In this document: piece after piece, positions 2,800 through 54,930 of the stretch
Position numbering within the stretch: position 1 is the first letter of the stretch
How the letters are laid out: each line of letters begins with the position of its first letter
NCBI GenBank assembly: GCA_000388065.2
Contig: KB932203.1
Origin: Fonticula alba ATCC 38817
Taxonomy: Eukaryota; Protista; Nucleariida
DNA length: 57,064 bases
Direction: 5' to 3' (one strand)
Translations under genes and position numbers: made by a program
Notes under the pieces: generated by a model
What the model was told of the DNA's origin: nothing
The model's database searches: none
Seen by the model: only the letters and a program-made list of their open reading frames with translations

Positions 2800-3466
2800 A
2801 TGGACCCGAACACGGCGCAGGTACTGTTCCCCATGGCCCCCCTCCCCTCGTGTCTCCCCTCCCACTGACACCACCCCCGCCCCCGCGCTCCCACGCCTCC
2901 GCGCCTCCGTGTGTGCACGTCGTGGCCGGTGCGGGAAAAAAAAAACAATAACCCCGCCACGCGCACCACAACCAAGACTCTCGAAGATCTCGAGAAGCAC
3001 ATCTCCCTGCTGCTGGAGAACAACACCGAGACCGTCAAGAATGCCACCGACTACCTGAACAAGAACTACCTGAAGTCCCCGCAGAGCGTGCCGGCCCTCT
3101 GCCATCTGATGTTCAACTCGCCGAACCCGGTGGTGCGGCCTTCCTCGTGCTCTCGGCCCCAGCCGCCCACCTGCCCGTCCCTCTCTTTTTTTTTTTTCAT
3201 TGACCTGGCCCCCTTTTTCACGCAAGCGCAGATCCGCCAGATGTCCGCCACCCTCCTCTTCCGCCAGGTCACCCGCTATTGGATCCGCGTCCCTGAGGCC
3301 GAGCGCAATGCCCTCAAGGAGACCATGCTCAACCAGATCGTCTCCGACCCCTCGTCCGTCCCCCCNNNNNNNNNNNNNNNNNNNNNNNNNNNNNNNNNNN
3401 NNNNNNNNNNNNNNNNNNNNNNNNNNNNNNNNNNNNNNNNNNNNNNNNNNNNNNNNNNNNNNNNNN

Positions 3467-3501
<35 letters not shown>

Positions 3502-6500
3502 ACACACACACTCATTAGTGAGGTCGTCCGCCGGGCCATGGCCCGTGTCGTGTCGGTCATCGCCAAGCACGAGGCCGCCAGCAACACCTGGCCGCAGCTC
3601 TTCGACTTCCTGAACCAGTGCTGCATGTCGGCCGACGTGTCCCACCGCGCCCTTGGCCAGCAGCTGTTCCTCACCTGCTCCGACACCATTGCCGAGACCC
3701 TGCGCAAGCACTTCCCCTACCTCTTCCAGAATGTCTTCGCCCGTGGCCTCAAGGACCCGGAGTCGCTGGACATCCGCGTGACCACGGCCCGCACCATCTC
3801 CCGCCTGTCGCTGTTCCTCAAGAGCAGCGAGGAGACCATGCTCTTCCAGAACGTGGCCTCCGACCTGCTGGCCACGCTGGCGGCTTGCATCGCCGAGGAT
3901 GACTCCTCCAACGCCATTCTTGTGTTCGAGGCCATCGACGAGATCCTGGAGCAGGTCCGTGTCTGGCGCCCGGCCGAGCCGATCGCTGTCCACCTCATGC
4001 CATGCCCCGTGCTCCCTTGCCTGGTTGTGGCTTTCATGCCTACACGCATGCACGCGTGCACGCATACATGCCTACGCGCATATATATATATATATATATA
4101 CGCATACATGCACATACACACACGCACACGCCCACTTACTGGCCCCCCCCCTCCCCCCCCCTCCTCCTCCTCGATACCACAGCCCCGCCCCCTCTTTGCC
4201 AGCCACTACATGGAGCTCATCAACAGCGCCATGTCGGCCGTCATCAACCCCGACCTGGAGGAGGACATCCGCCACCGCGCCCTGACCATGATCATGTGGC
4301 TGTCCCTCTACAAGCGCCGCGCCCTCACCTCCACCAAGAAGATCCCGGAAATCGTGGCGCGCATCGTGCACATCCTGGCCGAGCGCGAGGAGCTCGTCCG
4401 CGGCGAGATCATCGCCAATGATGACCCCGACGCGCCGGACCTCTTCAGTGTCGCCTGCGAGACCCTGGACGCCTTCGCGGCCAAGCTCTCCCCGACCGTC
4501 ATCGGCCCCATCATCCTGGACCTGCTGACCCAGGCCTTCGCCCAGGGGGTCGACGCGCCGGCCATGCGCGCCGCCACGCTCATGGCCCTGGGCCTCATTT
4601 CCGAGGGCTGCGCCGACTTCCTCTTCAACAACCACGGGGCCTTCTTCGGCCTCATGGTCCGGGCCCTGGAGGACCCGGTCCCCGGGGTCCGGCAGCTGGC
4701 CTGCCTGGGCCTGGTCCGCCTGGCCACCACCCTGCAGGATCTGATCACCGTCAGCCATGCGGAGATCATCCCCCGGCTGATGCGCATCATGGACGTCGAC
4801 ACCACCGACACGGCTCGCGAAAAGGTCTGCCTCTGCCTGGATGCCATCTGCGAGATCATCGGCGATGGGGTGCTGCCCTACCTGGAGCCGCTGTTCCAGC
4901 GCATCGGCGCCCTCCTGACCACCACCAGCCGCCCGGTGCAGCAGTCCCTGCTGGGCATCATCAGCTCCCTGGCCTTCGCGGCCGGCGAGCGCTTCAGCCC
5001 CTACCTGGACCAGGTCATTTCCATCTTCCGCACGGCCCTCAGCATGACCGCCGAGGAGGATGTCGAGCTCCGTGCCGCTGGCATCAGCTCCCTCGGGGCG
5101 GTGGCCACCTCGGTCGGGGCCGACCTCTTCCGGCCCTACCTGGCCGAGTTCCTGGACCAGGTGAACCTGGTCTTCCAGGATGACAATCCGGCCCTGCGCG
5201 AGGCCAGCTACGAGTTCTACTCGTGCATTGTTCGCGCCTACCGCGACGAGTCGGCCTCCCTGCTGGAGGTGGTCGTCCCGCGCATGTTCGAGTCGGTCAG
5301 CTCCGAGGCCGGCATTCAGCCGGTGGTGGACGACCTCGGCGAGGCCGATGACCTTGACCCGGATGCCGAGGGCAACGGCGAGTTCCTCCACTCGCAGTTC
5401 ATCAGCTCGGCCCCCTACCTGTATGAGAAGGTCCTGGCTGTCAGTGCCCTGGGTGACATGTGCATGCACGCCCCGGCGGCCTTTGCCCCGTACATTGCCC
5501 GGTCGGTGGAGCTCCTGGTCGATCAGGCCGAGTACTTCCACGCCTCGGTCCGCCTGGCCGTGGCCGTTTCCCTGGGCCAGTTCATCAAGAGCTCGCGCAA
5601 CCTGCAAATGGGCACCGTGCCGTTTGAGGAGAACAAGGTATGTGCCGCCCCCCCCCCCCCCCCCCNNNNNNNNNNNNNNNNNNNNNNNNNNNNNNNNNNN
5701 NNNNNNNNNNNNNNNNNNNNNNNNNNNNNNNNNNNNNNNNNNNNNNNNNNNNNNNNNNNNNNNNNNNNNNNNNNNNNNNNNNNNNNNNNNNNNNNNNNNN
5801 NNNNNNNNNNNNNNNNNNNNNNNNNNNNNNNNNNNNNNNNNNNNNNNNNNNNNNNNNNNNNNNNNNNNNNNNNNNNNNNNNNNNNNNNNNNNNNNNNNNN
5901 NNNNNNNNNNNNNNNNNNNNNNNNNNNNNNNNNNNNNNNNCCCCCCCCCCCCCACGCCACACGCCCCGTGCCATACCATGCCGCGTTCTCCCCTCCCTCT
6001 CGCGTGCCTGTCCGACCGAATGGCGGGGCCTGGGTCTTGTCCCCTGCAGAAGAAGGAGATCACCCCGGAGCTGCAGGATCTCCTGAACAAGATCGTGCCG
6101 ACCGTCATCGAGATGCTGGTGGCCGATGTGGATCCGTGCGTTTGGCGAGGGCCGACTGCTGGCTGGCTTTTTTGGCCGACCCTTTTCTTTTCTCCTCTCT
6201 CACACCGGATCTCGCATCCGCCGCGCGTCCCTCCCCTACCCCCCCTCCCCCTGCCTCCCCGTTCCCAGTGAGGTCTCTCGCGAGTGTATCTCCATCATCA
6301 GCGAGATGCTGCGCCATGTTGGCCCCTGCCTGCTGACCGAGGAGTGTGCGTCTCCCTCCTCGCGGCTGGCCCCTCTCTGTCTGTTCCCCTGCGCGCATGC
6401 GCACGCACAGGCGGCCTGCTAACCCTGTTTTGTGCCCAGCCTTCTCCGAGATCTCCACCATCCTGGTGATGATCTTCAGCGGCCAGCTTCCCTGCCAGAT

Positions 6501-12531: not shown

Positions 12532-13100
12532 GACGCCAGGGGGGAGGGGCGGAGGGCGAGAGCAGAGAGGGCGAGCAAGAGGAAGAGGGCGCTTGCGGGT
12601 GTTCCCCCTGCCGGCAGCAGCGACGGGCTCGCGGGCGATATTTTTTATTGTTGTTGTTTTTTTTTCCCTGTTTATTGGCCGCCCCTCTCCCCATCCAAAG
12701 CCCCCGCGCCGTAGAACCAGCACCTCCCCAGTGTCTGTCTGGGGGGCGAGGCCGGGGGGGGGGGGNNNNNNNNNNNNNNNNNNNNNNNNNNNNNNNNNNN
12801 NNNNNNNNNNNNNNNNNNNNNNNNNNNNNNNNNNNNNNNNNNNNNNNNNNNNNNNNNNNNNNNNNNNNNNNNNNNNNNNNNNNNNNNNNNNNNNNNNNNN
12901 NNNNNNNNNNNNNNNNNNNNNNNNNNNNNNNNNNNNNNNNNNNNNNNNNNNNNNNNNNNNNNNNNNNNNNNNNNNNNNNNNNNNNNNNNNNNNNNNNNNN
13001 NNNNNNNNNNNNNNNNNNNNNNNNNNNNNNNNNNNNNNNNNNNNNNNNNNNNNNNNNNNNNNNNNNNNNNNNNNNNNNNNNNNNNNNNNNNNNNNNNNNN

Positions 13101-30015: not shown

Positions 30016-30812
30016 ATGATGCGCCTTTGCCTTCGCGGCCGAACGCCGGCTTCGCCGCACATTCCCCCCCCCCCTCCCCCGCCTCCTCCNNNNNNNNNNN
30101 NNNNNNNNNNNNNNNNNNNNNNNNNNNNNNNNNNNNNNNNNNNNNNNNNNNNNNNNNNNNNNNNNNNNNNNNNNNNNNNNNNNNNNNNNNNNNNNNNNNN
30201 NNNNNNNNNNNNNNNNNNNNNNNNNNNNNNNNNNNNNNNNNNNNNNNNNNNNNNNNNNNNNNNNNNNNNNNNNNNNNNNNNNNNNNNNNNNNNNNNNNNN
30301 NNNNNNNNNNNNNNNNNNNNNNNNNNNNNNNNNNNNNNNNNNNNNNNNNNNNNNNNNNNNNNNNNNNNNNNNNNNNNNNNNNNNNNNNNNNNNNNNNNNN
30401 NNNNNNNNNNNNNNNNNNNNNNNNNNNNNNNNNNNNNNNNNNNNNNNNNNNNNNNNNNNNNNNNNNNNNNNNNNNNNNNNNNNNNNNNNNNNNNNNNNNN
30501 NNNNNNNNNNNNNNNNNNNNNNNNNNNNNNNNNNNNNNNNNNNNNNNNNNNNNNNNNNNNNNNNNNNNNNNNNNNNNNNNNNNNNNNNNNNNNNNNNNNN
30601 NNNNNNNNNNNNNNNNNNNNNNNNNNNNNNNNNNNNNNNNNNNNNNNNNNNNNNNNCCCGGATGGCCTCGCCCTCGGGGGGTCCTCGGCAACGACGAAGA
30701 AGGCTCCCCAGAGACCGTCCCTCCCCCTCCCCTCCTCCCCCCCTCCCCGACCGCTTTGCCGCCTTCCCACTCGCTCCCTCCTCCTGCTTCCCGCCGCCCC
30801 ATTTTTGCCCCT

Positions 30813-31113: not shown

Positions 31114-33625
31114 GGGTCTGTCGCGCGCGCCCCTTCCCTCGGATGCTCGTGCACGCCCCCGCGTGAGCGCGCACGCGCTTCCTCCCCCCCTCTTTCGGCG
31201 TGTGCGCCTCGTCCGCTTCGACATGCGGGCCGAGGGCCCGAAGGCAAGAGGGCGGGCCAGAGGGGCACGACCGCGTGCGCCCGCGCGCCCCCACGCGGCG
31301 TTGCCACCCCTCTGTGCTGGTGCCCGGGGGCGGAGCCCTGTTACCGGGCCCCTCCCCGGGGGGCCTATGCGCACTCACACACGATACACACACACACATA
31401 TACATACCCTTGTCTCAGGACTCATGTGAAACCCGGTGACGTACGATGCAGTCGTTGGGGGGCGGGAGGGGGAGTGGGGCGGGGGCATTGACGCGCGGGC
31501 GCACACCGCGGCTCTCGGCATGGCATGCGAGCCTTTGACCTGGCTGCCCAGGCAGCTCCTCGGGGACTCGCCCGGATGCTCCCTTGGGTGAGGTCGGCTT
31601 TGCCTGCCGCTCCTGGCCGGTGTGCTGCCCGCCGGGCATGGCGCAGGCGGGGGGCGCGAGGAGAACACGCGGCGGGGCCGCCGGGGCTCGGCGGTCTCTG
31701 GATGCGGCCCCCTCCAACACGCTCTTTTCCACACGAAGAACACGCAGAATCGGCCTTTCCCTGGCCCGGGCGCCTCTTGGCATGGCCGATCGCAGCCAGC
31801 TCGCATGCCTGAGAGGCGCCACCCAGGGACAACAAGACAGCACCGGGGGCCGGACCGAAAGAGGGTGGCCGGGAGAAACAACCCGACCAGCATATGCATG
31901 CGCATGCATGGGGAACGATTCAATGTCAGGCTATTAAAAAAGTGGGATAAAATACACGCGCATACACATGCATACACACACACGCACCCACCCACGCACA
32001 CAGACACACACACATTCGAACGCGGACCCGTCTGTGTCTCCGCTGTTTCTCCCCCTCTGCCTCTCGTCTTCTCTGTTAATCTCTTCTTCTCACCGGCCAC
32101 TGCCTGCTGGCCGTCGCGAGACGCGCCGAACAGGCGATGCTAAATGCGGCTTAATTGACACGGTCACGGAATGTACGCACGTGACCATCATCCACCGCGC
32201 ACAAGCGTGGACTCCCCGGCCTCTGAACTAGGGCTCTCGGTGCACACGCACACACGCGCGCGCGCGCGCGCAACTGCCTGTTGCTGTTCCTCTCTCTCCC
32301 TCTCTGGCTCCCTGACTCTCTCGCGAACCGCACCCACCGCCTCCCGGGAGCCGGGTGTCCCCATGTCGCCCGGGTCCCGCGAACAGAGCTCCGCAGAGAT
32401 TTCCCGGCTTCCCGAGGCGTGACATTGGAGAGCACAAGAAAAAATGGCCCCGTCTCCCGCGCGCGCGCGCGCGGGCACGCGCGTCCCCGAGGGTGCCTGA
32501 ACTACCGACGCTGGGATTTTTTACCAGGGTGCGGCGGGCCAACCGTTTTTTTCGCCTCGGTGCCCGACCCGTGGCAGCCAGCCCACGCCGCTGGGTTGCC
32601 TGCGTTGCTCGCCTCTGAATAGCGCGCGCGCGCGCGCGAGCTCGTGCCTGTGTGTGTGTGTGTGTGTGTCTGCGCGCCCATGATATTTCCATGGGTCGGG
32701 AGAGTGGGCCATGTACTGGGGGCGTGCCGGCCCCGACGCGCGTGCTCTCCCCCCCCCCCCCCCCCCCCCCCCCCCCCGCGCGGGACCCGCGCAATATACC
32801 CCGGCACCGGGCGCCCGAGGGCGCGCGTCTAGCGCTTTCGTCCCAATGGGCCGCGCGCATTATCCCGGTCCGGCCCCCTTCCCCTTTGCGGGCCGCCCCG
32901 GGGCGCCGGCGGCCNNNNNNNNNNNNNNNNNNNNNNNNNNNNNNNNNNNNNNNNNNNNNNNNNNNNNNNNNNNNNNNNNNNNNNNNNNNNNNNNNNNNNN
33001 NNNNNNNNNNNNNNNNNNNNNNNNNNNNNNNNNNNNNNNNNNNNNNNNNNNNNNNNNNNNNNNNNNNNNNNNNNNNNNNNNNNNNNNNNNNNNNNNNNNN
33101 NNNNNNNNNNNNNNNNNNNNNNNNNNNNNNNNNNNNNNNNNNNNNNNNNNNNNNNNNNNNNNNNNNNNNNNNNNNNNNNNNNNNNNNNNNNNNNNNNNNN
33201 NNNNNNNNNNNNNNNNNNNNNNNNNNNNNNNNNNNNNNNNNNNNNNNNNNNNNNNNNNNNNNNNNNNNNNNNNNNNNNNNNNNNNNNNNNNNNNNNNNNN
33301 NNNNNNNNNNNNNNNNNNNNNNNNNNNNTCCCACCTCCCCCCACTCCCCCCCGCTCATCCACAGGGCCCCTTTCTCGCCCCCCTTTTTTTCTACGCTTTC
33401 CCCTTCGCCTGAACCGGCCGAAGACACCGTGCGTTTCCATTCCCCCCCCCCCCCAGCATTCTCGGCTTGGTGCCCCCGCCCCCGCCCCCCTCCCTCCGAG
33501 TCCTCGCTCACCGTCTGCGCGCCCCTCGTCCCCGGTCCGTGGTCTCCGGCCCCTTCGCCCGGCTCTCCCCCCCCCCCCTCCGAACGTCTCTCCCGACAGC
33601 CGGCCCGCGCCCCATTACCACCACC

Positions 33626-37031: not shown

Positions 37032-40004
37032 TTTGCCAATCTTCCACCACAGGTCTCCCAGTTCGTCATGGCCAACATCAAGACCGTGCAGGATGCCCTG
37101 ACCACCGAGTACAACCAGCTGCTGGAGGACCGGGCCACGCTGCAGGAGTTCATCTTCCCGCGGCTGCGCGAGGACAAGTGCTACCTGCCGGTGAATGTCC
37201 TGCGGCTGATCCGCCACTCGCGGCGCATGCGCCAGCACAATGACACCCTCATCTGCGACCTGTCGCCGGTGCAGATTGTCGAAGAGGTGGCCAATCTGTG
37301 CGACCGGATTGTGGTCATCTCCGGCGACGACCCCATCAGTCGAACGGCCAACCGCAATGCCACCATGCTCTTCCGGATCCTCATCCGCCAGTATCTGTCC
37401 GTGCGCCGGGTGGTGGCGGAATTCCGCTTCGATCGGAGCTCCTTCCAGTGGGTCATCCACCAGATTGAGAGCCGCTTCCGGGATTCCATCATCCACCCGG
37501 GCGAGGCGGTGGGCACCATCGCCGCGCAGTCCATCGGTGAGCCGGCCACCCAGATGACCCTGAACACCTTCCACTCGGCCGGTATCGGCGCCAAGAACAT
37601 CACTCTCGGTGTCCCCCGACTGCGGGAGCTGATCGATGTGGCCCGGTCCATCAAGACCCCGTCCATGTCCATCATGCTGGTGGATGAGTTCAACCACTCG
37701 GAGAAGCAGGCTCACAAGGCGCTGGCGGCCATCGAGCACACCACCCTGGCCAAGGTCACCCACAAGTCCCAGGTGATCTACGATCCGGACCAGGCCAACG
37801 CCTCGGTGGTCGAGGCGGATGACGATTTCATCCAGCTGTTCTTCGCCACGGAGGTATGTCCTCCCGAGAGTGGCTCTGTGTGTGTGTGTGTGGTGGCGGT
37901 GGCGGGGGTAGTGGGCTGTTTCCTCTTCGTTCTTTTCCTTTTCCCCCTTTTTTTGGTACATCCCTCTTTTTTTTTCTCCCCCCTAATCCCGTTTCCCTCT
38001 TTCTCTCCCGCTTCGGCTCGCCGGCCAACAGAACGTGGATCCCGCCTCCCTTTCCCCCTGGGTGCTGCGCCTGGAGCTGGACCGCTCGGCGATGGAGGCC
38101 AAGCGCTGTTCCATGGACGAGGTGGCCGGCAAGATCGCCGAGCACCTAGTGCCGGCCAGCGACTTCGTCCTGATGCACTCGCACGACAACTACGAGAAGC
38201 TGGTCCTGCGCATCAGCATCCGCAACACCTCCGACTCCATGGACCAGAACTTCCCCGGGGACAAGATCCTCATCCAGTACGAGCGCAAGCTCCTGTCCAA
38301 GGTGGTGCTCAAGGGCATCGACAAGATCAAGCAGGTGAAGATCGACAAGATCCAGAACCCCAGCATCACGGTCGACGGCGGGCTGACCCCCTCCGGGCCG
38401 GCCGAGAACTACCTGGTCACCACCGGATCCAACATGCGGGATGTCCTGTCCAGCGAGTTTGTGGAGTTCCGCAACACCGTCACCAACAACATCGTCGAGA
38501 CGTGCGAAGTTTTGGGCATCGAGGCCGCTCGGCAGACCCTGCTGCTGGAGTTGAAGCGGGTCATCGAGTTCGACGGGAACTACGTCAACTACCACCACCT
38601 GGGCCTGCTGTGCGACGTGATGACCTACCGTGGCTTCCTGATGCCGATCAACCGCCATGGCTTCAACCGCAATTCCACCGGTGCCCTGATGCGGTCTTCC
38701 TACGAGGAGACCGTGGATGTTCTGCTGGAGGCGGCGGCCCATGCGGAGATCGACCGCATGCAGGGTGTCTCGGAGAACATCCTTCTGGGCCAGCTGTCGC
38801 CGGTGGGAACCGGCGTGTTCGATGTCATGCTCGATGAGGACAAGCTCCGCGAGGCCATTCCCCTGTCCAGTGTGGTGACTGGCGAGACGTGCGTCCCTCT
38901 CTTCGTCCGGCCGTCCTCCTTTTGCTCTCATCCCCCCCCCCCCCNNNNNNNNNNNNNNNNNNNNNNNNNNNNNNNNNNNNNNNNNNNNNNNNNNNNNNNN
39001 NNNNNNNNNNNNNNNNNNNNNNNNNNNNNNNNNNNNNNNNNNNNNNNNNNNNNNNNNNNNNNNNNNNNNNNNNNNNNNNNNNNNNNNNNNNNNNNNNNNN
39101 NNNNNNNNNNNNNNNNNNNNNNNNNNNNNNNNNNNNNNNNNNNNNNNNNNNNNNNNNNNNNNNNNNNNNNNNNNNNNNNNNNNNNNNNNNNNNNNNNNNN
39201 NNNNNNNNNNNNNNNNNNNNNNNNNNNNNNNNNNNNNNNNNNNNNNNNNNNNNNNNNNNNNNNNNNNNNNNNNNNNNNNNNNNNNNNNNNNNNNNNNNNN
39301 NNNNNNNNNNNNNNNNNNNNNNNNNNNNNNNNNNNNNNNNNNNNNNNNNNNNNNNNNNNNNNNNNNNNNNNNNNNNNNNNNNNNNNNNNNNNNNNNNNNN
39401 NNNNNNNNNNNNNNNNNNNNNNNNNNNNNNNNNNNNNNNNNNNNNNNNNNNNNNNNNNNNNNNNNNNNNNNNNNNNNNNNNNNNNNNNNNNNNNNNNNNN
39501 NNNNNNNNNNNNNNNNNNNNNNNNNNNNNNNNNNNNNNNNNNNNNNNNNNNNNNNNNNNNNNNNNNNNNNNNNNNNNNNNNNNNNNNNNNNNNNNNNNNN
39601 NNNNNNNNNNNNNNNNNNNNNNNNNNNNNNNNNNNNNNNNNNNNNNNNNNNNNNNNNNNNNNNNNNNNNNNNNNNNNNNNNNNNNNNNNNNNNNNNNNNN
39701 NNNNNNNNNNNNNNNNNNNNNNNNNNNNNNNNNNNNNNNNNNNNNNNNNNNNNNNNNNNNNNNNNNNNNNNNNNNNNNNNNNNNNNNNNNNNNNNNNNNN
39801 NNNNNNNNNNNNNNNNNNNNNNNNNNNNNNNNNNNNNNNNNNNNNNNNNNNNNNNNNNNNNNNNNNNNNNNNNNNNNNNNNNNNCCGGCCTACTCGCCCA
39901 CGAGCCCGGCCTACTCTCCCACGAGCCCGGCCTATTCCCCCACGAGTCCGGCCTACTCCCCGACCTCCAGTTCATACTCCTCCTCTTCTTCCTCCTCGTA
40001 CTGA
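33626..40004 (+). CDS. RPB1: DNA-directed RNA polymerase II largest subunit with heptad CTD
   Basis: Exons 33626-33700, 33787-33854, 34156-36760, 37053-37853, 38032-38888, then the gap, then the CTD ending TGA at 40004. Motifs: [35 protein letters not shown] (catalytic loop), [18 protein letters not shown] (bridge helix), [15 protein letters not shown] (trigger loop) and YSPTSP repeats. Confidence 0.99.
33991..34057. repeat. 16-bp minisatellite, 4 copies, in RPB1 intron 2
   Basis: tcctggcatcttcct[t/c] repeated four times plus tcc. Confidence 0.9.
38945..39884. other. Assembly gap (N run) hiding most of the RPB1 linker/CTD; other gaps at 3366-3466, 5666-5940, ~12766-13100, 30090-30656, 32915-33328 and 44161-44221
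   Basis: Runs of n in the sequence, most abutting poly-C or poly-G tracts. Confidence 1.
39885..39969 (+). repeat. RPB1 CTD 21-bp heptad repeats (visible 3' end only)
   Basis: Encodes [28 protein letters not shown]; the rest is hidden in the gap 38945-39884. Confidence 0.95.
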
Positions 40005-43495: not shown

Positions 43496-44442
43496 TTACC
43501 GGCCGGAGCGACGCATGAGGAGGTAGACATCCTCACCGAGGGCGAGGTTGTTCAGGTGGCGGGGAGCCACCTTCAGGCACATCAGCAGACCGCCGAAGGA
43601 AATGAAAAGGATGCTGCAGCGAGGGGGGGAGAGTGTGCAGACATGTGTCAGGATACAGGAGCCCACTCACAGGGAGAGAGAGAGAGGGGTGGGGGGGGAG
43701 ACAAAGGAAAGGAGCCAGGGCTCCGGGGGCCGGGGGGGGGGGAGGAGGAACGTACATCCTCCGGTCGCCGTCCTCCGGGACCGAGCGGTACACGCGGCCG
43801 TGCATGACATATTCGAAGTTGTCGGCCAGGGAGGGAGCGCCGCGCTGGTCGAAGCCAACCGGGTCGGCCGAATCGAGGGAAAGCTGCACGCGCAGGGGCC
43901 AGGAAAAGCAACAGGGTCAGACGACGGCATGGCGGGCCGAGGCATGGCCGGGCGGGTGACACCGGGGCAAAGCCCCAGGGACAAGAGCAAAGGGGAAAGG
44001 CAAAAGACACCGTCGCACCGTCTTGGACAGGACCAGGTAGAACTTGTTGTCGGCCTCCTTGTTCAGGGGGAACAGGTCCGAGTGCACATCGAGGGTGATC
44101 TCACCGGCGGTGTTTTCGCCGTTGGCCACGATGCGGGTGACTGTGACCGGGGGAGGGGGGNNNNNNNNNNNNNNNNNNNNNNNNNNNNNNNNNNNNNNNN
44201 NNNNNNNNNNNNNNNNNNNNNCGGTCTCCGCCATGCGCAGGCACGCGTGCGCGTGGGGAGCGGCCGGCCGGCCGGCAGACAGGTCAGCGACGGGAGGGCA
44301 CACGAGAGAAGGAGCCAAGAAGGACCAGCAACCGGCGGCCAAGAAGCGAAGGGGCAGACGACGCACCACGGTCGAACGGCTTGCCGCCGGGGTCCTGCTC
44401 GAAGACCTCGAAGTAATCCTCAAACTGGTGGGCAGAGGACAT
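43496..44442 (-). CDS. RPB8: RNA polymerases I/II/III shared subunit RPABC3
   Basis: Phase-consistent exons 44442-44367, 44140-44019, 43883-43756, 43613-43496 (TAA). Motifs FEDYFEV...DPGGKPFDRVTRI, LDVHSDLFP, SLADNFEYVMHGRVY, ISFGGLLM and VYLLMR. Confidence 0.97.
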
Positions 44443-44971: not shown

Positions 44972-47900
44972 TCAAAGCCTGCCATACCCATCGTCATCCT
45001 CGTCCGAAGGCCCGGCGATGCCGGCATGGAGGAAGTCCAGCCCGAGGTCGCCAGCCGGCTGGTCCTCGTCCGACATTTCCTCGGGCTCGGTGGCCTGGCT
45101 GTCAGAGCCCGAAAGCTCGGCATGGGCCTCCGTCGGGGGCCGAAGCGCCTGCACGCTGATCCCCGTCTCGCTGGCAGCCCACACGTCGGTCGGGATCACC
45201 TGCGACGAGACAACCTCCCCATCCAGGGCCCGGTGCTTCAGGTGCCCAATCCAGTAGGCAGCGGATGCGTCATTGCGCTCCAGCATCTGCCGGACACGGA
45301 AGAGCAGCGTCTCCAGGTCCCGCCGGAGCGGGGCCACGAGCCTCAAGGCCGTCGGCGGGAGGGTCGGCGTGCCATGGCTGGCAGCTGCGTCACGCGCCCG
45401 GGCAGTTGTGCCGGCGCTTGCCGAACGAGCCTGGCGCTTGCGCGCTCTCCCGCCGGCGTCGGTGGAGGTGGCGCCCGCGGCCGCGGCCGCGGCCGCCACC
45501 GCCTCCCGAGACGAAGAGCTTTTCACCAGCGAACAGGCGGACTGCAAGACACGCGTGCTCTTCTGCAAGGCCGCAAGCAGGGCCAGCACCGCCTGCCGGT
45601 GCGAGTGGCTCATGCCGAAGATCCGATCAAAGCAAGGCATCACATGCCGCATCCAGGCCCCGACGAAGGACCGGCCCAGGCGCAGGCAGGTCACCAGCAC
45701 CCCGGAGAAGGGAGCCGCTAGGACTGCATCATCCGCGGCGCGGATGGCCCCAACCAGCCCGGTGAAAGTCCCCAGGAGGAGCTCCAGTCGGCTGAGAACG
45801 ACAGCAGCTGCCCGTGCATGTGTTGATGCGTGTGGGTGGCGCGGGGGTGGCGCGGGGGTGTGAAGGAGGGCAGAGGAGGGAGGGGGGGGGGGAGGGAGTG
45901 CAGATTGCTCATAGGGTCAGTGACAGAAGCGGAAACATTGCCGAAGAGAAAGGCGGCTTCGCACCGCTGTCATGGCGCCGGTCCAGCAGACTGGGCGATA
46001 GGTGGGTCACATTGGCCACCAGCGCCTCGAAGCACAAACGGTGGTACTGGACAAAAGTTTGCAGCGTGATGCTCGATAGCCAGGAGTGTGTATCGTCCAT
46101 GGCTGCGGCGGTCTCGCCGTCGGCTGACTGTGATACGTCGGGCGAGAGGGAGCTCCATCCGCTTAGGAGCGGCCGCTCCAGAGCCTCGGCCAGGTCCTCG
46201 GCCCCCGCCGGCAGCCGCTCCAGCGCCTGCTGGTACTCGGGCAGGATCTGCCGGCAGAAGGGGATAACCACATGCGAGAAGGCCGCCGGAGATAGGAGGA
46301 GGTGCGCTCGGAGGACCAGCTCCAACTCAGATGTCTTCCGAGAGAGAGAGGGAGGGAGGGAGGGAGGGGGGAGGGAAGAAGAGAGAAAGGGGGGAAGGAA
46401 GAGGAAGGAGGGAGAAAGAGAGACAACCATTGCCGGGTTAGACGGCCACGGACGGAGAAGGAGAGAAAGGCGGGACAGAGGAGCAGCCATCGACCCAGGG
46501 CAGGCGCACATTCATGGTGGCCAGGTTCGGCACGCCGGCCAGCAAACGCCCCGCGAAGTCCGAAATGAGATGGAGAGGCCCGACGTCCGAGGCCGGGGAT
46601 GGCCGGGGCGCAGCCAACGCCGCGGGGCCCGCCGCTGCCGGGCAGATTGAGAAGAGCCGCGAAATGGCGAGTGCCGCGCGCAAAAGTTGCAACGGCTGCC
46701 GGTGCTCCACATCCGCCAGGCAGGGGGAGCTAGCAAGATCGATGGGAGGCCACGAGTCAGGCGCCAAATGGGACCGCATGCCAAAAAGCACCAAGGGACG
46801 CACAATAGCAGTGCCTGCAGGATGGTTTCCAAGTCGCAGTGACCACTGGCCGGGGGGGCCTCGACCAGCCGCAGGAAGAAGATGCTCACTTTCCGAGCGG
46901 TCTGCAGGAATGTCTGGGGCCAGGCGGAAGAGTCGGACAGAAACGCCGTGAGAAGCGGGGCACGGGCCAGAACAGGGAGCAGAGTAAAAAGCAGGGCAAC
47001 GAGCAGAGCAAGGGCCAGGCCGGACACGAGGACAGCCCAAAGGCCGGTGGGGGGGGGTACCTGGCGCAGAAGGTGCAGGAAGCCGGATGGCGAGTGCCGA
47101 GTCACCGATGCCAGAGGAGCCAGGTCGCTCTTGGGCGTTCGACCCAGCTGCACAAGGCTGGTGGCCACACGCTCGAGCACCCGCAGACCGGTACCGGCGG
47201 AATCCATCAGGTCCGCAATCTGCACACACGCGTGCGAGGTTGCCGGCGAAAGGACACGCGGGCGGGTGGGCAGGCAGGGAGTTAGCCCGGGCCAAGGGAG
47301 GAAGCAAGAATGGGCAACAACACAGCCGGGGGGCGAGTCTCCACACGCACGACATCATTCATGTCAGCCGACATCCGAAGAGCCTTGGGCGCCAGGGGGG
47401 GGGGGGGGGGGACGGGACGGGACGGCCGGGCGGGAGGAAGGGAGGAAGGGAGGAAGGGAAAAGGGGGGGGGGGGCAAGCACGGTTGGACGGGGATCGGTC
47501 AACATTTGACGGTCAAGGGCCGGAGGAAGAAGCAACACCGCAAAAGGGCACGCGCGCACCCGGTCCAGACGGAACAGAGCACACAGCGAGTACAGCCAGA
47601 TGTGACTGAGCCCGCCCTGCAACAGGAGGACGGAGATCCAGTGGGCCGGTGGCCAGCTGCTCGACACCGATTCCAGCGGCGCATCAATGTGCGCCTCCTC
47701 CGACTCGGGCAATCCATCGGCCGTGGCCGTGGCCGTGGCATCGGGAGATGCGTCATCGGCCAGGGGCTGCGCCGGCGCGGAGTCCGCGCTGGGGGCCGGC
47801 GCCCCGGGTGCCTGGAGGTATGCCGAAGACCACACCAGGCCGGTGCCGGCCAGCGCGGTGATCAGCCCATTGAAGTGAGTCGATGTGGCGGTCTTCATGC

Positions 47901-50900
47901 CGGTCATGCTGGCCAGGCTGTCAAATAGACCCACCGTGGAGCTGGTGAGGAAGTGACTGCAGAAGCGAATCTGCCAGCGGCAGCGGCAGCCACAACGAGG
48001 CGACAGGAGCCCGGGGGGGGGGGGGAGATCAAGGGAGGAGAGAGGCCGAGAACGCGAAGGAGTGCGAGATCAGGAGGAGAACGTCAGTCACAGCGCCTCC
48101 AGACCGGCCCAGTGCCCAGCGAAGAAGGACACCCAGACACACCTCGCTTGAGAGGCTGGAATCCATCTCGGCGGTCATCAGCGAGCGGAGCTGTGACCGT
48201 TGGGCGATCAGCGACGCGGCGCTCGCCTGTTGCCAGAGTCGACCAGAGGGAGTCAGTGGGGGCCAGGCACACGAAGAACATTCACGGGGAGAGGAGCCTT
48301 CCCGGCGATGCCACGGCCATCGCGTACCTTGAGCGGTGTGAAGCGCCGGACAAAAAGACTACCGACGAGCGAGCGCAAGAGCAGCAAAAGTGTCAGATCC
48401 CAGGCAGGGCCGTGGCCAGCAGGAGGAGGAGGGGGGCGGGGGGCGGGGCGGGGCGGGGGGCGGGGCGGACAAGCATGCAAAGAGAAGCGGACCTGACGAG
48501 GCGTGCCGGCGGCTCGGTACTCAGCTGCAAAGGCCACACCACACGGAGAAGAGGTGAGAGCGGAGCCCGGACAACACAATGCAAAACCCAAAGCGCACCA
48601 GATCGATGATGGCCTCTTCAGAGAGGGCCCCCTCGTCGCTGAGCAGGATGGCCGCCGACAAATGCGCAGCCAGAGCCCCAGGCGGCACGGTAAGACCAGC
48701 GGCCGGGCGCGCACGGCGCCGGGCACCGCCACCCCCGCCACCCCCGCCACCGCCGGTTCCAGGAGTTGCCTTCAGCGAGGCATTGACCAGTGTCAGCAGG
48801 CATGTCTCCAGGTGGATGAGCTGCCCGGCCCGACAGTAGAGCACCGATCGCAGGGTGCGCAGGCCTTCCCGGTGGGCATGGTGTACGGCCCCACCGCCGG
48901 GGAGGAACTGCAAGCCCTGCAGCGCCTGGAGATCCGGGTCACAGTGCTCCAGCTGCGCTCGAAACAGAACCGCCAGCCATGGCGTAAAGGCATTGAGCAG
49001 GTGTCGCAGCCTTCAACGGAAGGAGGAGGCGGTAGGAGCCATTCACGGTGGGGCACGCAGTCGGCCACAGCGGCATGGTCAGTCGGGGGGAGGGGGGGAG
49101 GGGGGGGAGGCGAGACGGAGCAACACAATGGCAGAGATTGGAACCGGATCCCCCGTGGCAGGGGGCCAGCCCGACAAGGCAACCACATGCGCACCAGTTG
49201 ATAGCATAGAAGAGCGACAGGATGACCGCCGGCGAGGGAGCCAGCTCGCCGATCTGCAAATGTTCCGGTCACACAAGGTGGCATTCAGTCAGGTCCGGCG
49301 GGAATCCACAGCACATGGGAGGAAGTGGCGGCGGTGGTGGCAGAAATGAGCAGACAAGTGGAGCGCACCGCCTCCACGTCAAACAAGGCAATCGGCGACA
49401 GGATGATCGGATCGATGACAGCCAGTAGCGGCTCATTTGAGGCCCCGGTCGCAAAGGCCGGGCCGGCGCCCGGGCCCAGCGAGAAGGAGCTGCAATACCG
49501 GTACAACAGGAAGTGCGAGCCCAGCGTGGACAGCCGCAGGCGTCGAGGCTTCCCCTGGGCACTGAGCAGCAGGCACCGATGGATCGCGGCCACCAGCGAC
49601 GGACCGCCTCCGACCGGACTGGCCGACGTGTGGGCAGAGCCGACCAGAGACAAGCTTGCCAGCGACTCCGACCCATGATCGCCCCCGAGGGATGATGCCA
49701 CCGAGGGGTAAATGTCCACGCACACGGCCGGTGGAAGTGGCTGTATGTGCACGTGCATGTGCAGTTGTGTGTGTGGGGGGGGGGGGGGGGAGATATGGGG
49801 GCCGAACAAATGTGAGTGCCTGAGGAGGAACCGAAGGAGAAAGGGGAACTGCAGCCATGGACGCAAAGTGCAGCAGCAAGAAGGAGGGCCCATGGCCATT
49901 GGGCGCACGGTGTTCGTATTCGGAGAGGCCACATGGAGCTCCACGGACACAGGGGGCGAAAGCGGCCGAGCTGCCGGAACATGACGGCCGCCCCCGGCAG
50001 CCGGAGCCTCCAGGAGGGAAACTCGCGAGGCCAACTCCGACGGCGACACCAGGTACCGGCTCTGCCCGCCACAGGGTAGGCTCCAGGATGTCAGTCCCAA
50101 GTGGGCGGAAGGGAGAAGGGCGACCCCGGCCGAGCAGACTCGCTGCGTCCCGGTGAACGGACCTGAAACTGAACAATCACGTCCTTGAGAATGAAGGACA
50201 AGAGGGACTCATCGACCGCGCGCCACGGGGCCAACAGGCCGCCCGGGCAGATGGGCAGCTCTGGCCGCGAACCTGGCCCCTGCGAGCCCTGGAATTGCTG
50301 AACTGTGCGCAGGAAGCGTGTCAGCTCCCGGAGGAAATGCCCGTGATGGGCCTGCACCGCATCATGGCCGCCGTCCGATGGTGCAAGACAGGGACAGGGG
50401 AAGTACGTCAGCAGGGAGCTCAGGACTGAAACCCCAACAGCCAGCGGGACCAGGGCAGCACCGTCACAGGATGCAGCACTTGCAAAGAGAGGGGGAAAAG
50501 AGCGGAAGACAGAGGGATATAGGGGGAGGGGGGGGGGGCGGGGGGGCGGGGGGGCGGGGGAAGGAAGAGAAGGGATGCACCTGCGACAGCCGGGCCATGT
50601 CGCTCAGCAGACAGAAGAGCCCACGCCCATGGCGGGACAATGTCTGCCGGAAGGACTCACTGAGCGTCGTCAGGTCGGGGTCTTGCATCAGACGTCCGAG
50701 CTCACCGACTGCGGCGAAGATGCCCGACATGAAGAGCCGGTGCCGGGCCAGCAAAGCCGGCGAGAAGGTACGCGAGTGGCTCGGGCCACCGAGCACCGCG
50801 CCATCATCCTCCGCCAATGCCGCCAGATACCGGTGGAAGGTCGAAAGCAGGAAGCTCTGTGCACCGGCGAGGGAGGCAGGAGGTCAGAAGGCGCCCTCGC

Positions 50901-52492
50901 CGGACGCGTGGACGGGAGGGGGAGAGAGAGAGAGAGAGAGGCAAAAACAGAAGGAGCAAGGCTTGGGAAAAGACGATGGACAGGCGTGGGGGCACCTTTG
51001 AGCGCGAGCGCGAGCGCGGCCGAAACTCCGGCCCACGCAGAGACAGGCGCGTGGCCAGGTGAGCCAGCACTGCGAAGAGCCCGCGGCTGGTGGTCTCCGC
51101 GATTCCCGGCGGCGTCCCGGTCGCCAGCGACAGGACCGTCCCCTGGAGAACCGGCACCAGGGGATCCAGCCCGGCCGGGCCCAAATGCTCCGGCAGCTCC
51201 GGATGCAGGCCACGGGGGTGGCAAATCCAAGCCAGCGCGCATGCCCCGAGCAGGATCCGCACCTCCTACGACGAGTTAGTGGCCAGAGGGAGCTCCGGAA
51301 GGCGGGAGAAGGGAGCGCAAATGAAAGCCCCGCCGATGGGTCGCCCCCCCCCCCCGCCCCCCCCCCCATCGAGGACGCACCTCTCGTGAAGCCAGCAGGT
51401 CCGCCAAAGAACCCACCACTTGGCGCTGGAGGTGCTGCACGTCGGCCGGGCTGAGCCCCGGGTCGGCCAGGCCAACATCAGACCCCGGCGTGGCCCATTG
51501 CCCGGCCACGCGCTGTGCCACGGGCAAAAGGCAGAACAACAGTGCGGCCCAGCGCCCGGCCAGGCCAACCGCGGCCCCGGTAAAGCCTTCGGGCATGATG
51601 GGGTCCATGTTGGCAAGCCCAGGCAGGCGAAAGGCCGGCATGCGAGCCGCCTCGAGGGTGAAGTGTGCCAGTCCGGTTGGGAAAATGGTGAACGCATGGA
51701 GGAGGCTCCAGGGATCGGTTGTGGCAAAAAAAAGACAGAATGGCGTGGATGGGACAAAGGGGACGCGGCGAGAACGAAGAGGCAGCGAAGGAGCAGCAGA
51801 GGGGGCAGCAGAGGGGGTAGCAGAGGACAAACGGAGGCAGACGGTTAATCCGCTGATCGGAGGCCACATACAGTGCAGGGGGAGACCAGAGAGGGAAGAA
51901 AAAAAAAGAAAGACAGAGCGAAAGAGAGGAATGAAGAGGACACGGCCGATCCGCACTCTGGTCTGGTGGAGAAGAGGGCCAGCGTGCGCGCCAGCAAGTC
52001 CGCACGGAGGCGCCCGTGCAAGGTCAGCATGAGAAGCAGCAGGCAGGCCAGAGCCGCCAGGCGGTCTGCCGGCTGCGGCGCCTCCAGCAGGCCGGTCCCA
52101 AAGACCGTGAGCGCTGGGGCATGTGCACTTGAGTTGCCCGGGTGTGCCAGCGAAAAGGCAGTCCCGTGGAGGCCTACGCGCGTGCTGCCCCGTCGACTCG
52201 GGCCGGCGTCCATGACGCCAGCCGCCAAGCGTATCAGCAGGACCAGATCCAATGGCGACGGACCAGCCGACTGGAGGCCAGGTAGGTGTTGGGGGAGGGA
52301 AACAAGGGCAAACCGTGAGCAGAGGACAAATGACCCTCCCGCCAGGACATGCCGCCAGAGAGACGCACATCGTCGAATGCCGAGCGGAGCCAATGGAAGC
52401 CGACGTGCGGCTCATTGGTGAAAAGTGTCATGAGCGTGTCTGGAAGGGCATAAAACAGGTAAGAGGTTGTCGAAAAGGGAAATGAGGAGAGC

Positions 52493-52528
<36 letters not shown>

Positions 52529-54854
52529 TGGCCAGGCATAGCAGACGTCGGGAGGCGCACCTTGCAGCGACAGGTGCAGATCGGGCGAGAGGGCTGGGCT
52601 GCCAAGCTCCCCAGACAGGGCGCGGGCCGCCACGTCCGGGCCCCCGCCATCCATTCCGCCGCCAGTGTCCGAGGCCACCAACCCCACGCCGAGAGCCAGC
52701 AGCCGGGCTCCGGCCACTCGAGCCGCATGGCCGGCTACCTGCCGCACAACGGCCACCGACTGCGACAGCTCCGACTCCGGGGACACCTGCCGGAGCATGG
52801 TGTGCAACGCCTGCAAAGCCGCCCCGGCCAAGGGGATCCCCCGGAGCTGATCACCCCCAGGGCCAGGGGCCACGAGCATGCTTAACGGGCTGGACAGGCA
52901 CCGGTCAGCCAGGAGATCGCTGTGCGGCCCGCCGGCCAGCCAGGCGGCCGCCACGCGCCCGGCCCCGGCCAGCAGAGTTTCCGTGACCCCGGGCCAGGTC
53001 CCCGGCGCCAGGGTGTCCAGGCGCCGGCGCAGGAACCCGAGGAAGTGTGCCGTCGACAAGATGTCCCGGTGGGCCTCAAGGCCGGGGCTCGGGGCCGAAG
53101 AGCCGGCACGGGCCACCGCATGGCCCAGCGCCCGGAGCAGAGCAATTTGCAATTGTCCCAGGCCGATGGCCAGCGGACGGTCGGCCACCACCGTGGCTCC
53201 CATTGCCGAAGGCAGCCCCTCGGACCCCGGGGCCCACGCACTCCGGGGGAAGAGAAGCTCATGGATGTCGAAAAGGTCCAGGGCCAGGGACTTTGAGTCA
53301 AGAGGAAGGGCGGAGGAGGGGGGGGGGGGGACGGGGGCGGGAACACATCAGTAAGCGAAGGACTCCGGCAGAGGGAGCAGCAAGAGGCGCAATTTCGGCC
53401 ATATGTGTACCCGGTGCACGGCGTCATCGGCCGCCGGGGTCTCGGCTCGAAGGAAGGAGAAGCGCGGGATCAGCAGGACCAGCCGCTGGAGCAGGTCCCC
53501 GAGCCGCAGGGCGAATTGGCCAACCAGCATGTGTTGACCGCCGGTCAGGGCGGGCTCCTCCAGCCCCGGCATCCGATCTAGCAGCGGCCGAAGGATCCCC
53601 GCCACGGCGCGCAAAACCCGGCCAAAGGGCGATCCACCGCCAGGGACAGGGCCAGCCGGTAGGAGGTCGGCACACAGCAGGACCACCGCCCCGGGCAGAA
53701 GGTGGTCCGATCGGTGGAGGAAGTCCCCAAGCCCCGAGGCCAGCAGGATCCCGGTGTCCGCCATGCCGGTGACAAAGCGCCCATCGGCTCCGGCCGCCGG
53801 GTCGCCGTCCGTGTGGGCCGACTGCTCCAGCAGTGCCTCCAGCCGGGCGGCTCCCTGCTCCAGGGGCACGAGCAGCGCCCGCAACATGGCCGCAAGGGCT
53901 GTCCCCTGTGCCAGGGCATAGGGGAAGCCCCCGGGGTCGCTGGGCTCTGGCGTGGGCGTGCTTGCCCGAGAATGGGCCTGCTGGGCCGTCAGCGTCAACA
54001 GAAGGTCCAACGTGGAGAAGCCCAATTCCACGGACGGGGCATCGGCCTGCGGCTCAAGGACAATGCTGCATGACAGGCGAGTCAGTGACGGGAAGGCGCG
54101 AGAAGAAAGGCAGGGGGGGGGGGAGGCAGGCAGGATGGCGCCCCGGGCCCCGACTCGCTCCCCAGATGGACGCACCTCGACAGACCGCACCACAGCCGGC
54201 TGAGGTCCGAGCGCCGGAGGGCCTTGCCGCCCGGGTGGGGATTCTGGCGGAAAACCAACCCGCAGGAGTATTGGGCGAAGCCGCACGCAGCCGCCAGGGC
54301 CCCGTACGCCAGGCGGTCGCCAGCCAGGCGGTCCCACCAGGAGAGATCAGATGTGTCGCCATGCCCGCTGCCACCGCCACCGCCACCGCCGGGGCCCGAC
54401 AGGAGGGCCTTGTATCCGGCGCCAAGGGCCGCAATGGAGCCTTGATCAAAGATCCGGCCAACGCACTGATCCATGGCCTCGGAGCTGACGGCCGACAGGG
54501 GACCCACCAGTGCCGGGCCCGGCGAACGGAGCAGCGTCAGCAGCGACATGACAATGGTGCGCATGTCTGTGGCCGAGGGGCGGGTGGGCGTGCCCGAACG
54601 GGGTGTCAGAACATCACACATGAGGACCGGGAGGAGCGGCGGAGCGGCGGAGCGGCGGAGCGGAGGACCGAGGCAAACGCACCTGGCTGCGTCCCCGGCG
54701 GATAGCGGCAAACATCACGAACGACCGGCTTGCCGGCCCCGGCGGCGGGCCCACATGCAGGGACTTGCTCGGCCAGGAAGATCCGGCACTCCCGCAGCAG
54801 GTGGCGGAAGTACTCGCCCAGAGGGGGCGACGCAGGTAGAGAGCCTTCAGACAT
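44972..54854 (-). CDS. FANCD2: Fanconi anemia group D2 homologue, large and divergent, roughly 19 or more exons
   Basis: The C-terminal region matches FANCD2: LVTCLRLGRSFVGAWMRHVMPCFDRIF, VLALLAALQKSTRVLQSACS, LRRDLETLLFRVRQMLERNDASAAYWIGHLKHRALDGEVVSSQ (compare human FWLGNLKNRDLQGEEI), and ITLQTFVQYHRL. The first exons splice in phase: 54854-54683, 54566-54176, 54065-53411, 53290-52561, 52439-52369, 52270-51957. Middle exon boundaries, the start and the stop are less certain. Confidence 0.88.
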
Positions 54855-54930
54855 GGTGCATGGTGTGTGCGTGCGCGCGCCGGCCAGCAGGGAGCACACG
54901 GCGGGAGGCGGGAATCGAATCCAGAGAGAG

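What the first reader, a model, noticed from the sequence alone, without database searches (positions are those of the whole stretch)
52850..53060. FANCD2 homologue appears to lack the monoubiquitination lysine (K561-equivalent reads Arg)
Seen: exon 4 reads [61 protein letters not shown]...QLRGIPLAGAA, with the Arg codon CGG at 52903-52901. From my splice model this is about residue 536. There is no Lys anywhere in this helix or its flanks. Established: human FANCD2 reads [31 protein letters not shown]...DDMHLVIRK(561)QLSST...KLIGIIGA, K561 is ubiquitinated by UBE2T/FANCL, and K561R is the standard ubiquitination-dead mutant. Inference: the by-eye alignment ([16 protein letters not shown] vs [25 protein letters not shown] vs LVIRKQLSS) puts Arg, or Cys with a one-residue shift, at K561. 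This would imply an FA-pathway clamp working without D2 ubiquitination, using FANCI or another site, or repurposed in this lineage.
Basis: partly seen in the sequence, partly recalled or inferred. Interest (0 to 1): 0.8.

Follow-up and report, generated by a model that had tools for sequence, protein, structure and literature searches.

The report
Diverged FANCD2; acceptor lysine misplaced by reader

Summary
The equation R536 = K561 is wrong. A full-length profile alignment (hhalign probability 99.8) and a structural match (Z 18-21) put human residues ~480-829 on residues 880-1400. R536 falls near human ~260, upstream of a collinear anchor (655-690 ~ human 354-385).

The real K561 neighbourhood is residues 961-1016 (exons 8/9, about 51040-50740). 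It is bounded by RGLFAVLAHLAT (~[12 protein letters not shown]) and RLFMSGIFAAVGELG (~KLIGIIGAVTMAG). There the hhIRKQL motif is unrecognisable. This lysine is invariant in 36 diverse FANCD2s. No method places a Lys on that column (hhalign A989, MAFFT H1015, best ungapped register R985).

The only Lys between residues 173 and 1123 is K976 (AAG 50998-50996, last codon of exon 8). It lies at the N-terminal end of the helix whose C-terminal end carries K561 elsewhere. Local confidence is low (hhalign 1-3, pLDDT <50). The broader idea, that the canonical acceptor lysine is lost or displaced, remains open and about even odds.

The parts
44975..54854 (-). FANCD2 orthologue: 24 coding exons, 2224 aa (protein P0001)
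   Evidence: Exact mapping of P0001 onto the window. Pfam FancD2 at 63.2 bits. hhalign against a 38-sequence FANCD2 family alignment: probability 99.8, Q276-2160 ~ T39-1412.
52562..53290 (-). It corresponds to the N-terminal solenoid, about human 190-350.
   Evidence: low local confidence, but upstream of the 655-690 ~ 354-385 anchor. No significant local match on its own.
52901..52903 (-). Not the equivalent.
   Evidence: Pairs with human-like ~263 in hhalign. Lies 344 residues before the segment that superposes on human 480-829. Unchanged in RNA and DNA contigs.
51047..51085 (-). Upstream anchor, aa 947-959 RGLFAVLAHLAT, matching [12 protein letters not shown] (human-like 531-542)
   Evidence: hhalign confidence 5-8. 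Helix 941-962 in the model against helix 527-542 in the reference model.
50996..50998 (-). AAG = Lys976, last codon of exon 8. It is the only Lys between residues 173 and 1123, and the third residue of predicted helix 974-995.
   Evidence: Identical in the soil-metagenome contig X29, 50552-51263.
50857..50995 (-). Intron 8 (139 nt, phase 0, AAG|GTGCCC...CACAG|AGC). Not covered by RNA.
   Evidence: gene-wide donor consensus GTGCG. No RNA contig spans it.
50800..50856 (-). Start of exon 9: aa 977-995, the body of the helix that is topologically the K561 helix. The expected K561-equivalent lies at about 985-993 (R985 = CGG 50832-50830; A989 = 50820-50818). There is no Lys.
   Evidence: hhalign puts the K column on A989. 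The best ungapped register is R985. The helix order matches one-to-one between models.
50740..50742 (-). His1015, the residue MAFFT places on the K561 column (ALLARHRLF ~ HLVIRKQLS)
50695..50739 (-). Downstream anchor, aa 1016-1030 RLFMSGIFAAVGELG, matching KLIGIIGAVTMAG (human-like 572-584)
   Evidence: hhalign confidence up to 6. MAFFT near-invariant G column on G1021. pLDDT rises to 78-89 from here on.
50163..50216 (-). Strong anchor, aa 1114-1131 VDESLLSFILKDVIVQFQ, matching the human ~645-662 helix
   Evidence: hmmsearch domain, HMM 591-744 ~ P0001 1114-1335, E 5e-10. hhalign confidence 9.
51706..51956 (-). Intron 6, confirmed spliced out in an RNA-library contig
   Evidence: X1 record 6 joins 51705|51957, with ends GT..AG on the minus strand.
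44975..45808 (-). Last exon (aa 1947-2224), the well-conserved FANCD2 C-terminal region
   Evidence: Pfam E 4e-16. Human FANCD2 1289-1446. Own HMM domains at E 1e-24 and 2e-23.

Best explanation
This is the single, intact, transcribed FANCD2 orthologue of Fonticula alba. It is greatly expanded (2224 aa against about 1450) and extremely Lys-poor (15 Lys, 0.67%). Arg536 lies in the N-terminal solenoid and has nothing to do with ubiquitination.

The segment homologous to the K561 site is aa 961-1016 in exons 8/9. Helix 974-995 is the counterpart of the helix that carries K561 two residues before its C-terminal end. At that end the Fonticula protein has R985...AALAEDD, with no Lys and no hhIRKQL motif. 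So the canonical acceptor lysine has most likely been replaced. This fits the K-to-R/other drift seen at other conserved Lys columns of this protein.

Shown: homology, the gene model outside intron 8, the location of the site region, and the absence of any Lys from 977 to 1123. Inferred: that the canonical site is really lost, so that D2 here is either not ubiquitinated or is modified at a non-canonical place. The clamp would then work through the conserved C-terminal domain and FANCI.
For: Homology and placement: (VIA-align Z 18-21: model 1-521 = aa 880-1400 ~ human 480-829). K column: invariant in 36 diverse FANCD2s and present in 36 of 38. It is kept even in another Lys-poor (0.8%) orthologue, P0146 (LLQKEL). 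No method aligns a Lys to it: A989, H1015, R985. No further Lys codon occurs in any coding-like frame between 51400 and 50100. Helix-for-helix correspondence between the Fonticula model and the mammal-like reference model puts K562 at the C-end of helix 548-564 and K976 at the N-end of helix 974-995. Elsewhere the protein has R at conserved-K columns (R2109, R2119). The sequence is verified in independent DNA and RNA contigs, and one intron is confirmed.
Against: The 961-1016 stretch is the weakest part of every analysis: hhalign confidence 1-3 and AF2 pLDDT below 50 for aa 962-981 and 986-1014. The three methods disagree on the register. K976 is the only Lys in 950 residues, yet it falls inside the 56-residue interval that must hold the site (about 6% by chance at the local Lys density). 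This hints that it may be kept for a reason. The protein does keep the two most conserved other Lys (K2042, K2137). The exon 8/9 junction is not RNA-verified. Presence of FANCI, FANCL and UBE2T in this genome was not tested.
Confidence: 0.5

Rival explanations
1. The acceptor lysine is retained as K976. The site is functionally conserved but the surrounding sequence has diverged beyond recognition, or the Lys has slid to the start of the helix next to a flexible RS-rich loop. On this reading the protein is an ordinary, ubiquitinatable FANCD2.
For: K976 is the only Lys between residues 173 and 1123, and it lies between the two anchors that bracket the site. The spacing from the RGLFAVLAHLAT anchor to K976 is 17 residues, against 20 in the mammal-like sequence. 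KSFLLSTFHRY resembles human KQLSSTVFKYK by eye. The local alignment and model are low-confidence.
Against: The register with K976 on the K column scores at the protein-wide average (z -0.1). It was chosen by no alignment in which the paired residue could be read reliably (hhalign, MAFFT L/G/E-INS-i, ungapped profile; the MAFFT --add --keeplength rows returned unreliable numbering and were discounted). The residues before it (PEFRPRSRSRS) cannot form the buried hydrophobic helix that precedes K561. The helix count between anchors is 4 in both models, which puts K976 at the wrong end of the K-helix. An AAG at an exon end is also favoured by the splice donor: 2 of the 15 Lys (K976, K1484) are exon-terminal AAG|GT.
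Confidence: 0.33
2. One reading: the helix in exon 4 is the K561 helix, and Arg536 (or Cys537) occupies the acceptor position.
For: By-eye similarity of [16 protein letters not shown] to [16 protein letters not shown] and of LLADRCLSS to LVIRKQLSS. The local profile score is z about 2.2.
Against: The collinear alignment pairs R536 with human ~260 and places the true [31 protein letters not shown] counterpart at aa 921-959. The structure match puts human 480-829 on aa 880-1400. Exon 4 alone matches nothing significantly. Higher-scoring chance hits occur elsewhere in the protein.
Confidence: 0.02
3. Gene-model artefact: the real mRNA differs around exons 8/9 and encodes a canonical RKQL-type site.
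For: The exon 8/9 junction has no RNA support. The donor GTGCC departs by one base from the gene's GTGCG consensus.
Against: Between 51400 and 50100 the only Lys codons in coding-like context in any minus-strand frame are K976 and K1124. A six-frame search with the family HMM finds no extra FANCD2-like piece. The candidate site residues 977-1030 lie in one uninterrupted exon, together with the downstream anchor.
Confidence: 0.05
4. The gene is under relaxed constraint or has been repurposed. Loss of the Lys is then part of a general decay of the FA ubiquitination module in this lineage.
For: The N-terminal two-thirds are barely recognisable. About 770 extra residues of low-complexity insertions are present. 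Only the C-terminal ~330 aa are well conserved.
Against: The reading frame is intact across 24 exons. The gene is transcribed and spliced. The fold is retained helix by helix in the middle region. GC3 is strongly elevated in the coding frame. A FANCI-like gene is noted elsewhere in the genome (unchecked).
Confidence: 0.1

Closest known systems
Human/vertebrate FANCD2 (PDB 6VAE, 7KZV, 7AY1, 3S4W; acceptor K561)
   Same: The Pfam FancD2 domain is present. The full length is collinear with the family profile (probability 99.8). The middle region has the same order of helices and strands and superposes at Z 18-21. The C-terminal region (human 1289-1446) is clearly conserved, including an acidic tail.
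   Different: It has 2224 aa against 1451, with many Gly/Ala/Pro/Ser-rich insertions, and 0.67% Lys against about 6%. The hhIRKQL...KYKxxG acceptor motif is unrecognisable, and no Lys aligns with K561. The loop after the K-helix is 13 residues rather than 4.
P0146, an intronless FANCD2 from ENA assembly ERZ1300892 (another Lys-poor, GC-rich eukaryote)
   Same: It shows comparable Lys depletion (0.8%) and the same family.
   Different: It keeps a recognisable LLQKEL...YQRIG acceptor motif with the Lys in the invariant column. Lys depletion alone therefore does not force loss of the site.
FANCD2 K561R, the laboratory ubiquitination-dead mutant
   Same: If R985 is the true equivalent (TFHRYL ~ VIRKQL), the Fonticula protein would be a natural K-to-R at this position.
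   Different: The register is not established (R985, A989 or H1015). The natural protein has a spare Lys (K976) one helix-length away.
FANCI (paralogous solenoid; PDB 3S51)
   Same: The fold is the same class: the model matches FANCI at Z about 10.
   Different: The match is much weaker than to FANCD2 (Z 18-21), and the Pfam hit is FancD2 rather than the FANCI families.

Membership tests
FANCD2 (Pfam PF14631) | Significant match to the family profile above the curated threshold | tested here: met
   P0001 scores 63.2 bits against a cut-off of 27, E 1.2e-17. The own family HMM gives E 8e-54.
FANCD2 (Pfam PF14631) | Collinear full-length homology, not only the C-terminal domain | tested here: met
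   hhalign probability 99.8, aa 276-2160 ~ 39-1412 of a mammal-like FANCD2. Local confidence is low over much of the N-terminal half.
FANCD2 (Pfam PF14631) | FANCD2 fold of the middle region (human ~480-830) | tested here: met
   AF2 model pTM 0.70. The top 11 Foldseek PDB hits are FANCD2. VIA-align Z 18-21 over human 480-829, against about Z 10 for FANCI.
FANCD2 (Pfam PF14631) | Invariant acceptor lysine in the hhIRKQL motif at the C-terminal end of the helix before KYKxxGhhGA | tested here: inconclusive
   No Lys is on the column by hhalign (A989), MAFFT (H1015) or the ungapped profile (R985). The only Lys nearby is K976, at the other end of the helix. The region has low confidence, so loss is likely but not proven.
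Fanconi ID2 ubiquitination module | Partner FANCI with its own acceptor Lys in the same genome | not tested
   There is only an unchecked earlier first-reader note of a FANCI-like protein on another piece of this genome. No FANCI query sequence was available from the tools.
Fanconi ID2 ubiquitination module | E3 FANCL and E2 UBE2T (and USP1/UAF1) encoded in the genome | not testable with these tools
   Only this window of the genome can be read. The one paper that screened Fonticula alba for FA proteins does not discuss its ID2 or FANCL status in the text read.

The most novel reading that the evidence does not exclude
Fonticula alba FANCD2 has truly lost the one residue that is invariant in other FANCD2s, the monoubiquitination lysine. 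Yet the gene remains intact, expressed and correctly folded. The FANCI-FANCD2 clamp in this lineage would then work without D2 ubiquitination, through FANCI-only modification, a non-canonical site, or a ubiquitin-independent mode.
Probability: 0.4. Interest if true: 0.7.

Novelty: new variant of a known kind. Interest (0 to 1): 0.42.

Why it matters
FANCD2 monoubiquitination at K561 is treated as the defining switch of the Fanconi pathway, and the Lys was the only invariant column in an alignment of 36 diverse orthologues made here. A natural orthologue that keeps the fold and the conserved C-terminal domain but lacks that Lys would be a ready-made separation-of-function allele. It would let one ask what FANCD2 does without its own ubiquitin, and whether FANCI ubiquitination or DNA clamping alone suffices. 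If instead K976 turns out to be the acceptor, the case shows how far the site can move along the helix, which bears on how UBE2T-FANCL selects its target. It is also a caution for by-eye motif matching in helical-repeat proteins.

Tried and rejected
- **Pfam on exon-sized pieces.** Scans of 25 minus-strand ORF pieces found only the last exon.
- **PDB search with exon 4.** phmmer of the exon-4 ORF against PDB sequences found nothing.
- **Sub-profile searches.** Sub-HMMs of the K561 region (human-like 520-600, 480-640 and others) against P0001, and the full family HMM against a six-frame translation of the window, gave no significant hit in the region.
- **hmmalign.** In glocal mode it aligned only the C-terminus and was uninformative.
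- **Short-motif scanning.** It does not discriminate: many unrelated helices outscore every candidate.
- **An alternative local match.** It would leave 30 residues for three helices before the E 5e-10 anchor at 1114.
- **My own first by-eye alignment.** K976 = K561 was downgraded after the register scores and the helix-by-helix comparison.
- **RNA support for the exon 8/9 junction.** The only RNA run of the organism (X1, small, 2012) does not cover it.
- **Pattern scan of genome contigs.** It found nothing because that collection is prokaryotic.
- **The search for homologous proteins.** Not spent. The exhaustive representative search found no relative closer than about 45% identity even for the best-conserved exon, so bridging sequences are not in the database.
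- **MAFFT --add --keeplength.** Its residue numbers were unreliable and are ignored.

Full report
**Observation.** CGG at 52903-52901 encodes Arg. An exhaustive protein search with the last exon returned the genome's own annotated product, P0001 (2224 aa, 100% identical). Mapping it back gives 24 coding exons from 54854 down to 44975. An RNA-library contig (X1, 52771-52922) and an independent soil-metagenome DNA contig (X29, 52532-53215) cover the codon without any difference. Another X1 contig joins 51705|51957 across intron 6, so the gene is transcribed and spliced. These are assembler contigs, not raw reads. The record is GCA_000388065.2 / KB932203.1. The same assembly number is cited as Fonticula alba in PMC11061109.

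**Is it FANCD2?** Yes.
- The last exon hits Pfam PF14631 (E 4e-16) and human FANCD2 chains at residues 1289-1446.
- The whole protein scores 63.2 bits against a cut-off of 27.
- An HMM built from 38 full-length relatives gives E 8e-54, with domains at 1114-1335, 1902-2044 and 2103-2156.
- All other exon-sized pieces, including exon 4, are individually undetectable by Pfam or by phmmer against PDB.

**Where is K561?** hhalign of P0001 against the family alignment (first row P0086, a mammal-like sequence whose K562 equals human K561) gives probability 99.8 over aa 276-2160 ~ 39-1412. Confidence per column shows collinear anchors. Their support comes from this collinear full-length alignment: aligned on their own, the local pieces are not individually significant (E 0.03 for the 649-688 piece).

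| P0001 residues | Human-like residues | hhalign confidence |
|---|---|---|
| 655-690 | 354-385 | 5-9 |
| 868-890 | 468-490 | not listed |
| 947-959 (RGLFAVLAHLAT ~ [12 protein letters not shown]) | 531-542 | 5-8 |
| 1016-1030 (RLFMSGIFAAVGELG ~ KLIGIIGAVTMAG) | 572-584 | up to 6 |
| 1114-1137 | 645-668 | 9 |

R536 pairs with about residue 263 and lies upstream of the first anchor.

An AF2 model of aa 880-1400 (pTM 0.70) hits solved FANCD2 structures as its top 11 Foldseek matches. It superposes on human residues ~480-829 with Z 18-21. K561 therefore lies inside aa 880-1400, more precisely between the anchors at 961-1016. Exon 4 alone matches nothing significantly. The equation R536 = K561 is refuted.

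**What is at the true site?** The Lys column is the only invariant column in a MAFFT alignment of 36 diverse FANCD2 middle regions, and holds K in 36 of 38 sequences in my own alignment. In Fonticula no method puts a Lys on it:
- hhalign gives A989.
- MAFFT in L-, G- and E-INS-i modes on four segment choices gives H1015, once R1005.
- The best ungapped profile register inside 962-1020 gives R985 (TFHRYL ~ VIRKQL, z 2.2).
- The register with K976 on the column scores z -0.1.

P0001 has only 15 Lys (0.67% against 5.7% in the family). None lies between 173 and 975, or between 977 and 1123. A scan of all three minus-strand frames from 51400 to 50100 finds no other Lys codon in coding-like context. 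A six-frame HMM search finds no hidden exon.

K976 (AAG 50998-50996) is the last codon of exon 8. It is followed by GTGCCC and a 139-nt CT-rich intron ending CACAG. The gene's donors are almost all GTGCG. The junction has no RNA coverage, but residues 977-1068 are one uninterrupted exon that also holds the downstream anchor.

**Structure-level reading.** A high-confidence reference model of the mammal-like segment 440-830 (pLDDT 91) has six helices in this stretch, with K562 the third residue from the C-terminal end of helix 548-564. The Fonticula model has the same number and order of helices.

| Mammal-like reference | Fonticula model |
|---|---|
| 527-542 | 941-962 |
| 548-564 (carries K562) | 974-995 (K976 is its third residue) |
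| 569-587 | 1009-1033 |
| 600-622 | 1043-1064 |
| 626-642 | 1068-1091 |
| 647-665 | 1116-1134 |

Helix 974-995 is thus the topological K-helix. K976 is its third residue from the N-terminal end, and the expected acceptor position is about 985-993 (RYLAALAED). That is 9-17 residues, or roughly 15-25 A along a helix, from K976 (inference). The caveat is important. pLDDT is below 50 for aa 962-981 and 986-1014, and hhalign confidence there is 1-3.

**Weighing loss against displacement.**
- For loss: every automatic alignment whose pairing could be read, plus the helix topology. There is also a general K-to-R/other drift at conserved Lys columns (R2109, R2119, Q927, A2025).
- Against loss: K976 is the single Lys in 950 residues, yet it falls in the 56-residue interval that must contain the site. 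The protein keeps the two most conserved other Lys (K2042, K2137). Another equally Lys-poor FANCD2 (P0146, 0.8% Lys, intronless, ENA ERZ1300892) keeps a recognisable LLQKEL site.
- A non-functional reason for K976 also exists. Exon-terminal AAG is favoured by the splice donor, and 2 of the 15 Lys (K976, K1484) are exon-terminal.

**Comparison and novelty.** The gene is already annotated, with a Pfam FancD2 hit on record, so its existence is not new. PMC11061109 included the Fonticula alba proteome in a survey of Fanconi proteins but does not discuss its FANCD2 site. No paper found reports a natural FANCD2 without the acceptor Lys. FANCI, FANCL and UBE2T could not be tested with the tools at hand. 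I class the finding as a new variant of a known kind, held at moderate confidence.

**Verdict.** The title claim is relocated to aa 974-1016 and is still open. The decisive tests are listed under next steps.

Noticed in passing
window 44975-54854 (protein P0001): Extreme lysine depletion: 15 Lys in 2224 aa (0.67%, against 5.7% in 38 relatives), with Arg at 6.9%. Two of the 15 Lys (K976, K1484) are exon-terminal AAG|GT codons, about 13 times the chance expectation.
   Followed up: partly
window 44975-54854, all 23 introns: The splice donors of this gene follow an unusual consensus, G|GTGCG(Y), rather than GTRAGT. Introns are short (74-254 nt) and often hold (CT)n or G/C homopolymer runs.
   Followed up: partly
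window 50522-50560 (intron 9): A G-rich tract (GGGGGAGGGGGGGGGGGCGGGGGGGCGGGGGGGCGGGGG on the + strand) attracts thousands-fold contig depth from every run laid. The window holds over 50 G or C homopolymers of 12-46 nt.
   Followed up: no
window 3366-3466, 5666-5940, 12766-13100, 30090-30656, 32915-33328, 38945-39884, 44161-44221: There are seven assembly gaps (runs of N), several flanked by long C or G homopolymers. The apparent low-GC stretch at 38-40 kb is largely the 940-N gap.
   Followed up: partly
window 49000-54900, runs X29, X30-X33, X34: Near-identical DNA (4 single-base differences and one 3-nt insertion in 5.9 kb) occurs in a soil metagenome, a sediment metagenome and 2025 DNA runs labelled as a different organism. 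This suggests that this protist is a common environmental or culture companion.
   Followed up: no
L001:1001-5101: P0146 is an intronless 1366-aa FANCD2 with 0.8% Lys, from ENA assembly ERZ1300892, next to a Mis12-family gene. It keeps the acceptor Lys (LLQKEL), which makes it a useful control for GC-driven Lys loss.
   Followed up: partly
P0001 aa 1410-1430 (window about 48760-48700): A Gly run followed by RRRARP (GTGGGGGGGGGGGARRRARPAAG) lies where the mammal-like protein has a Lys/Arg-rich stretch (KSKNKGN-LRRRRKK). This is another place where Lys seems replaced by Arg.
   Followed up: no
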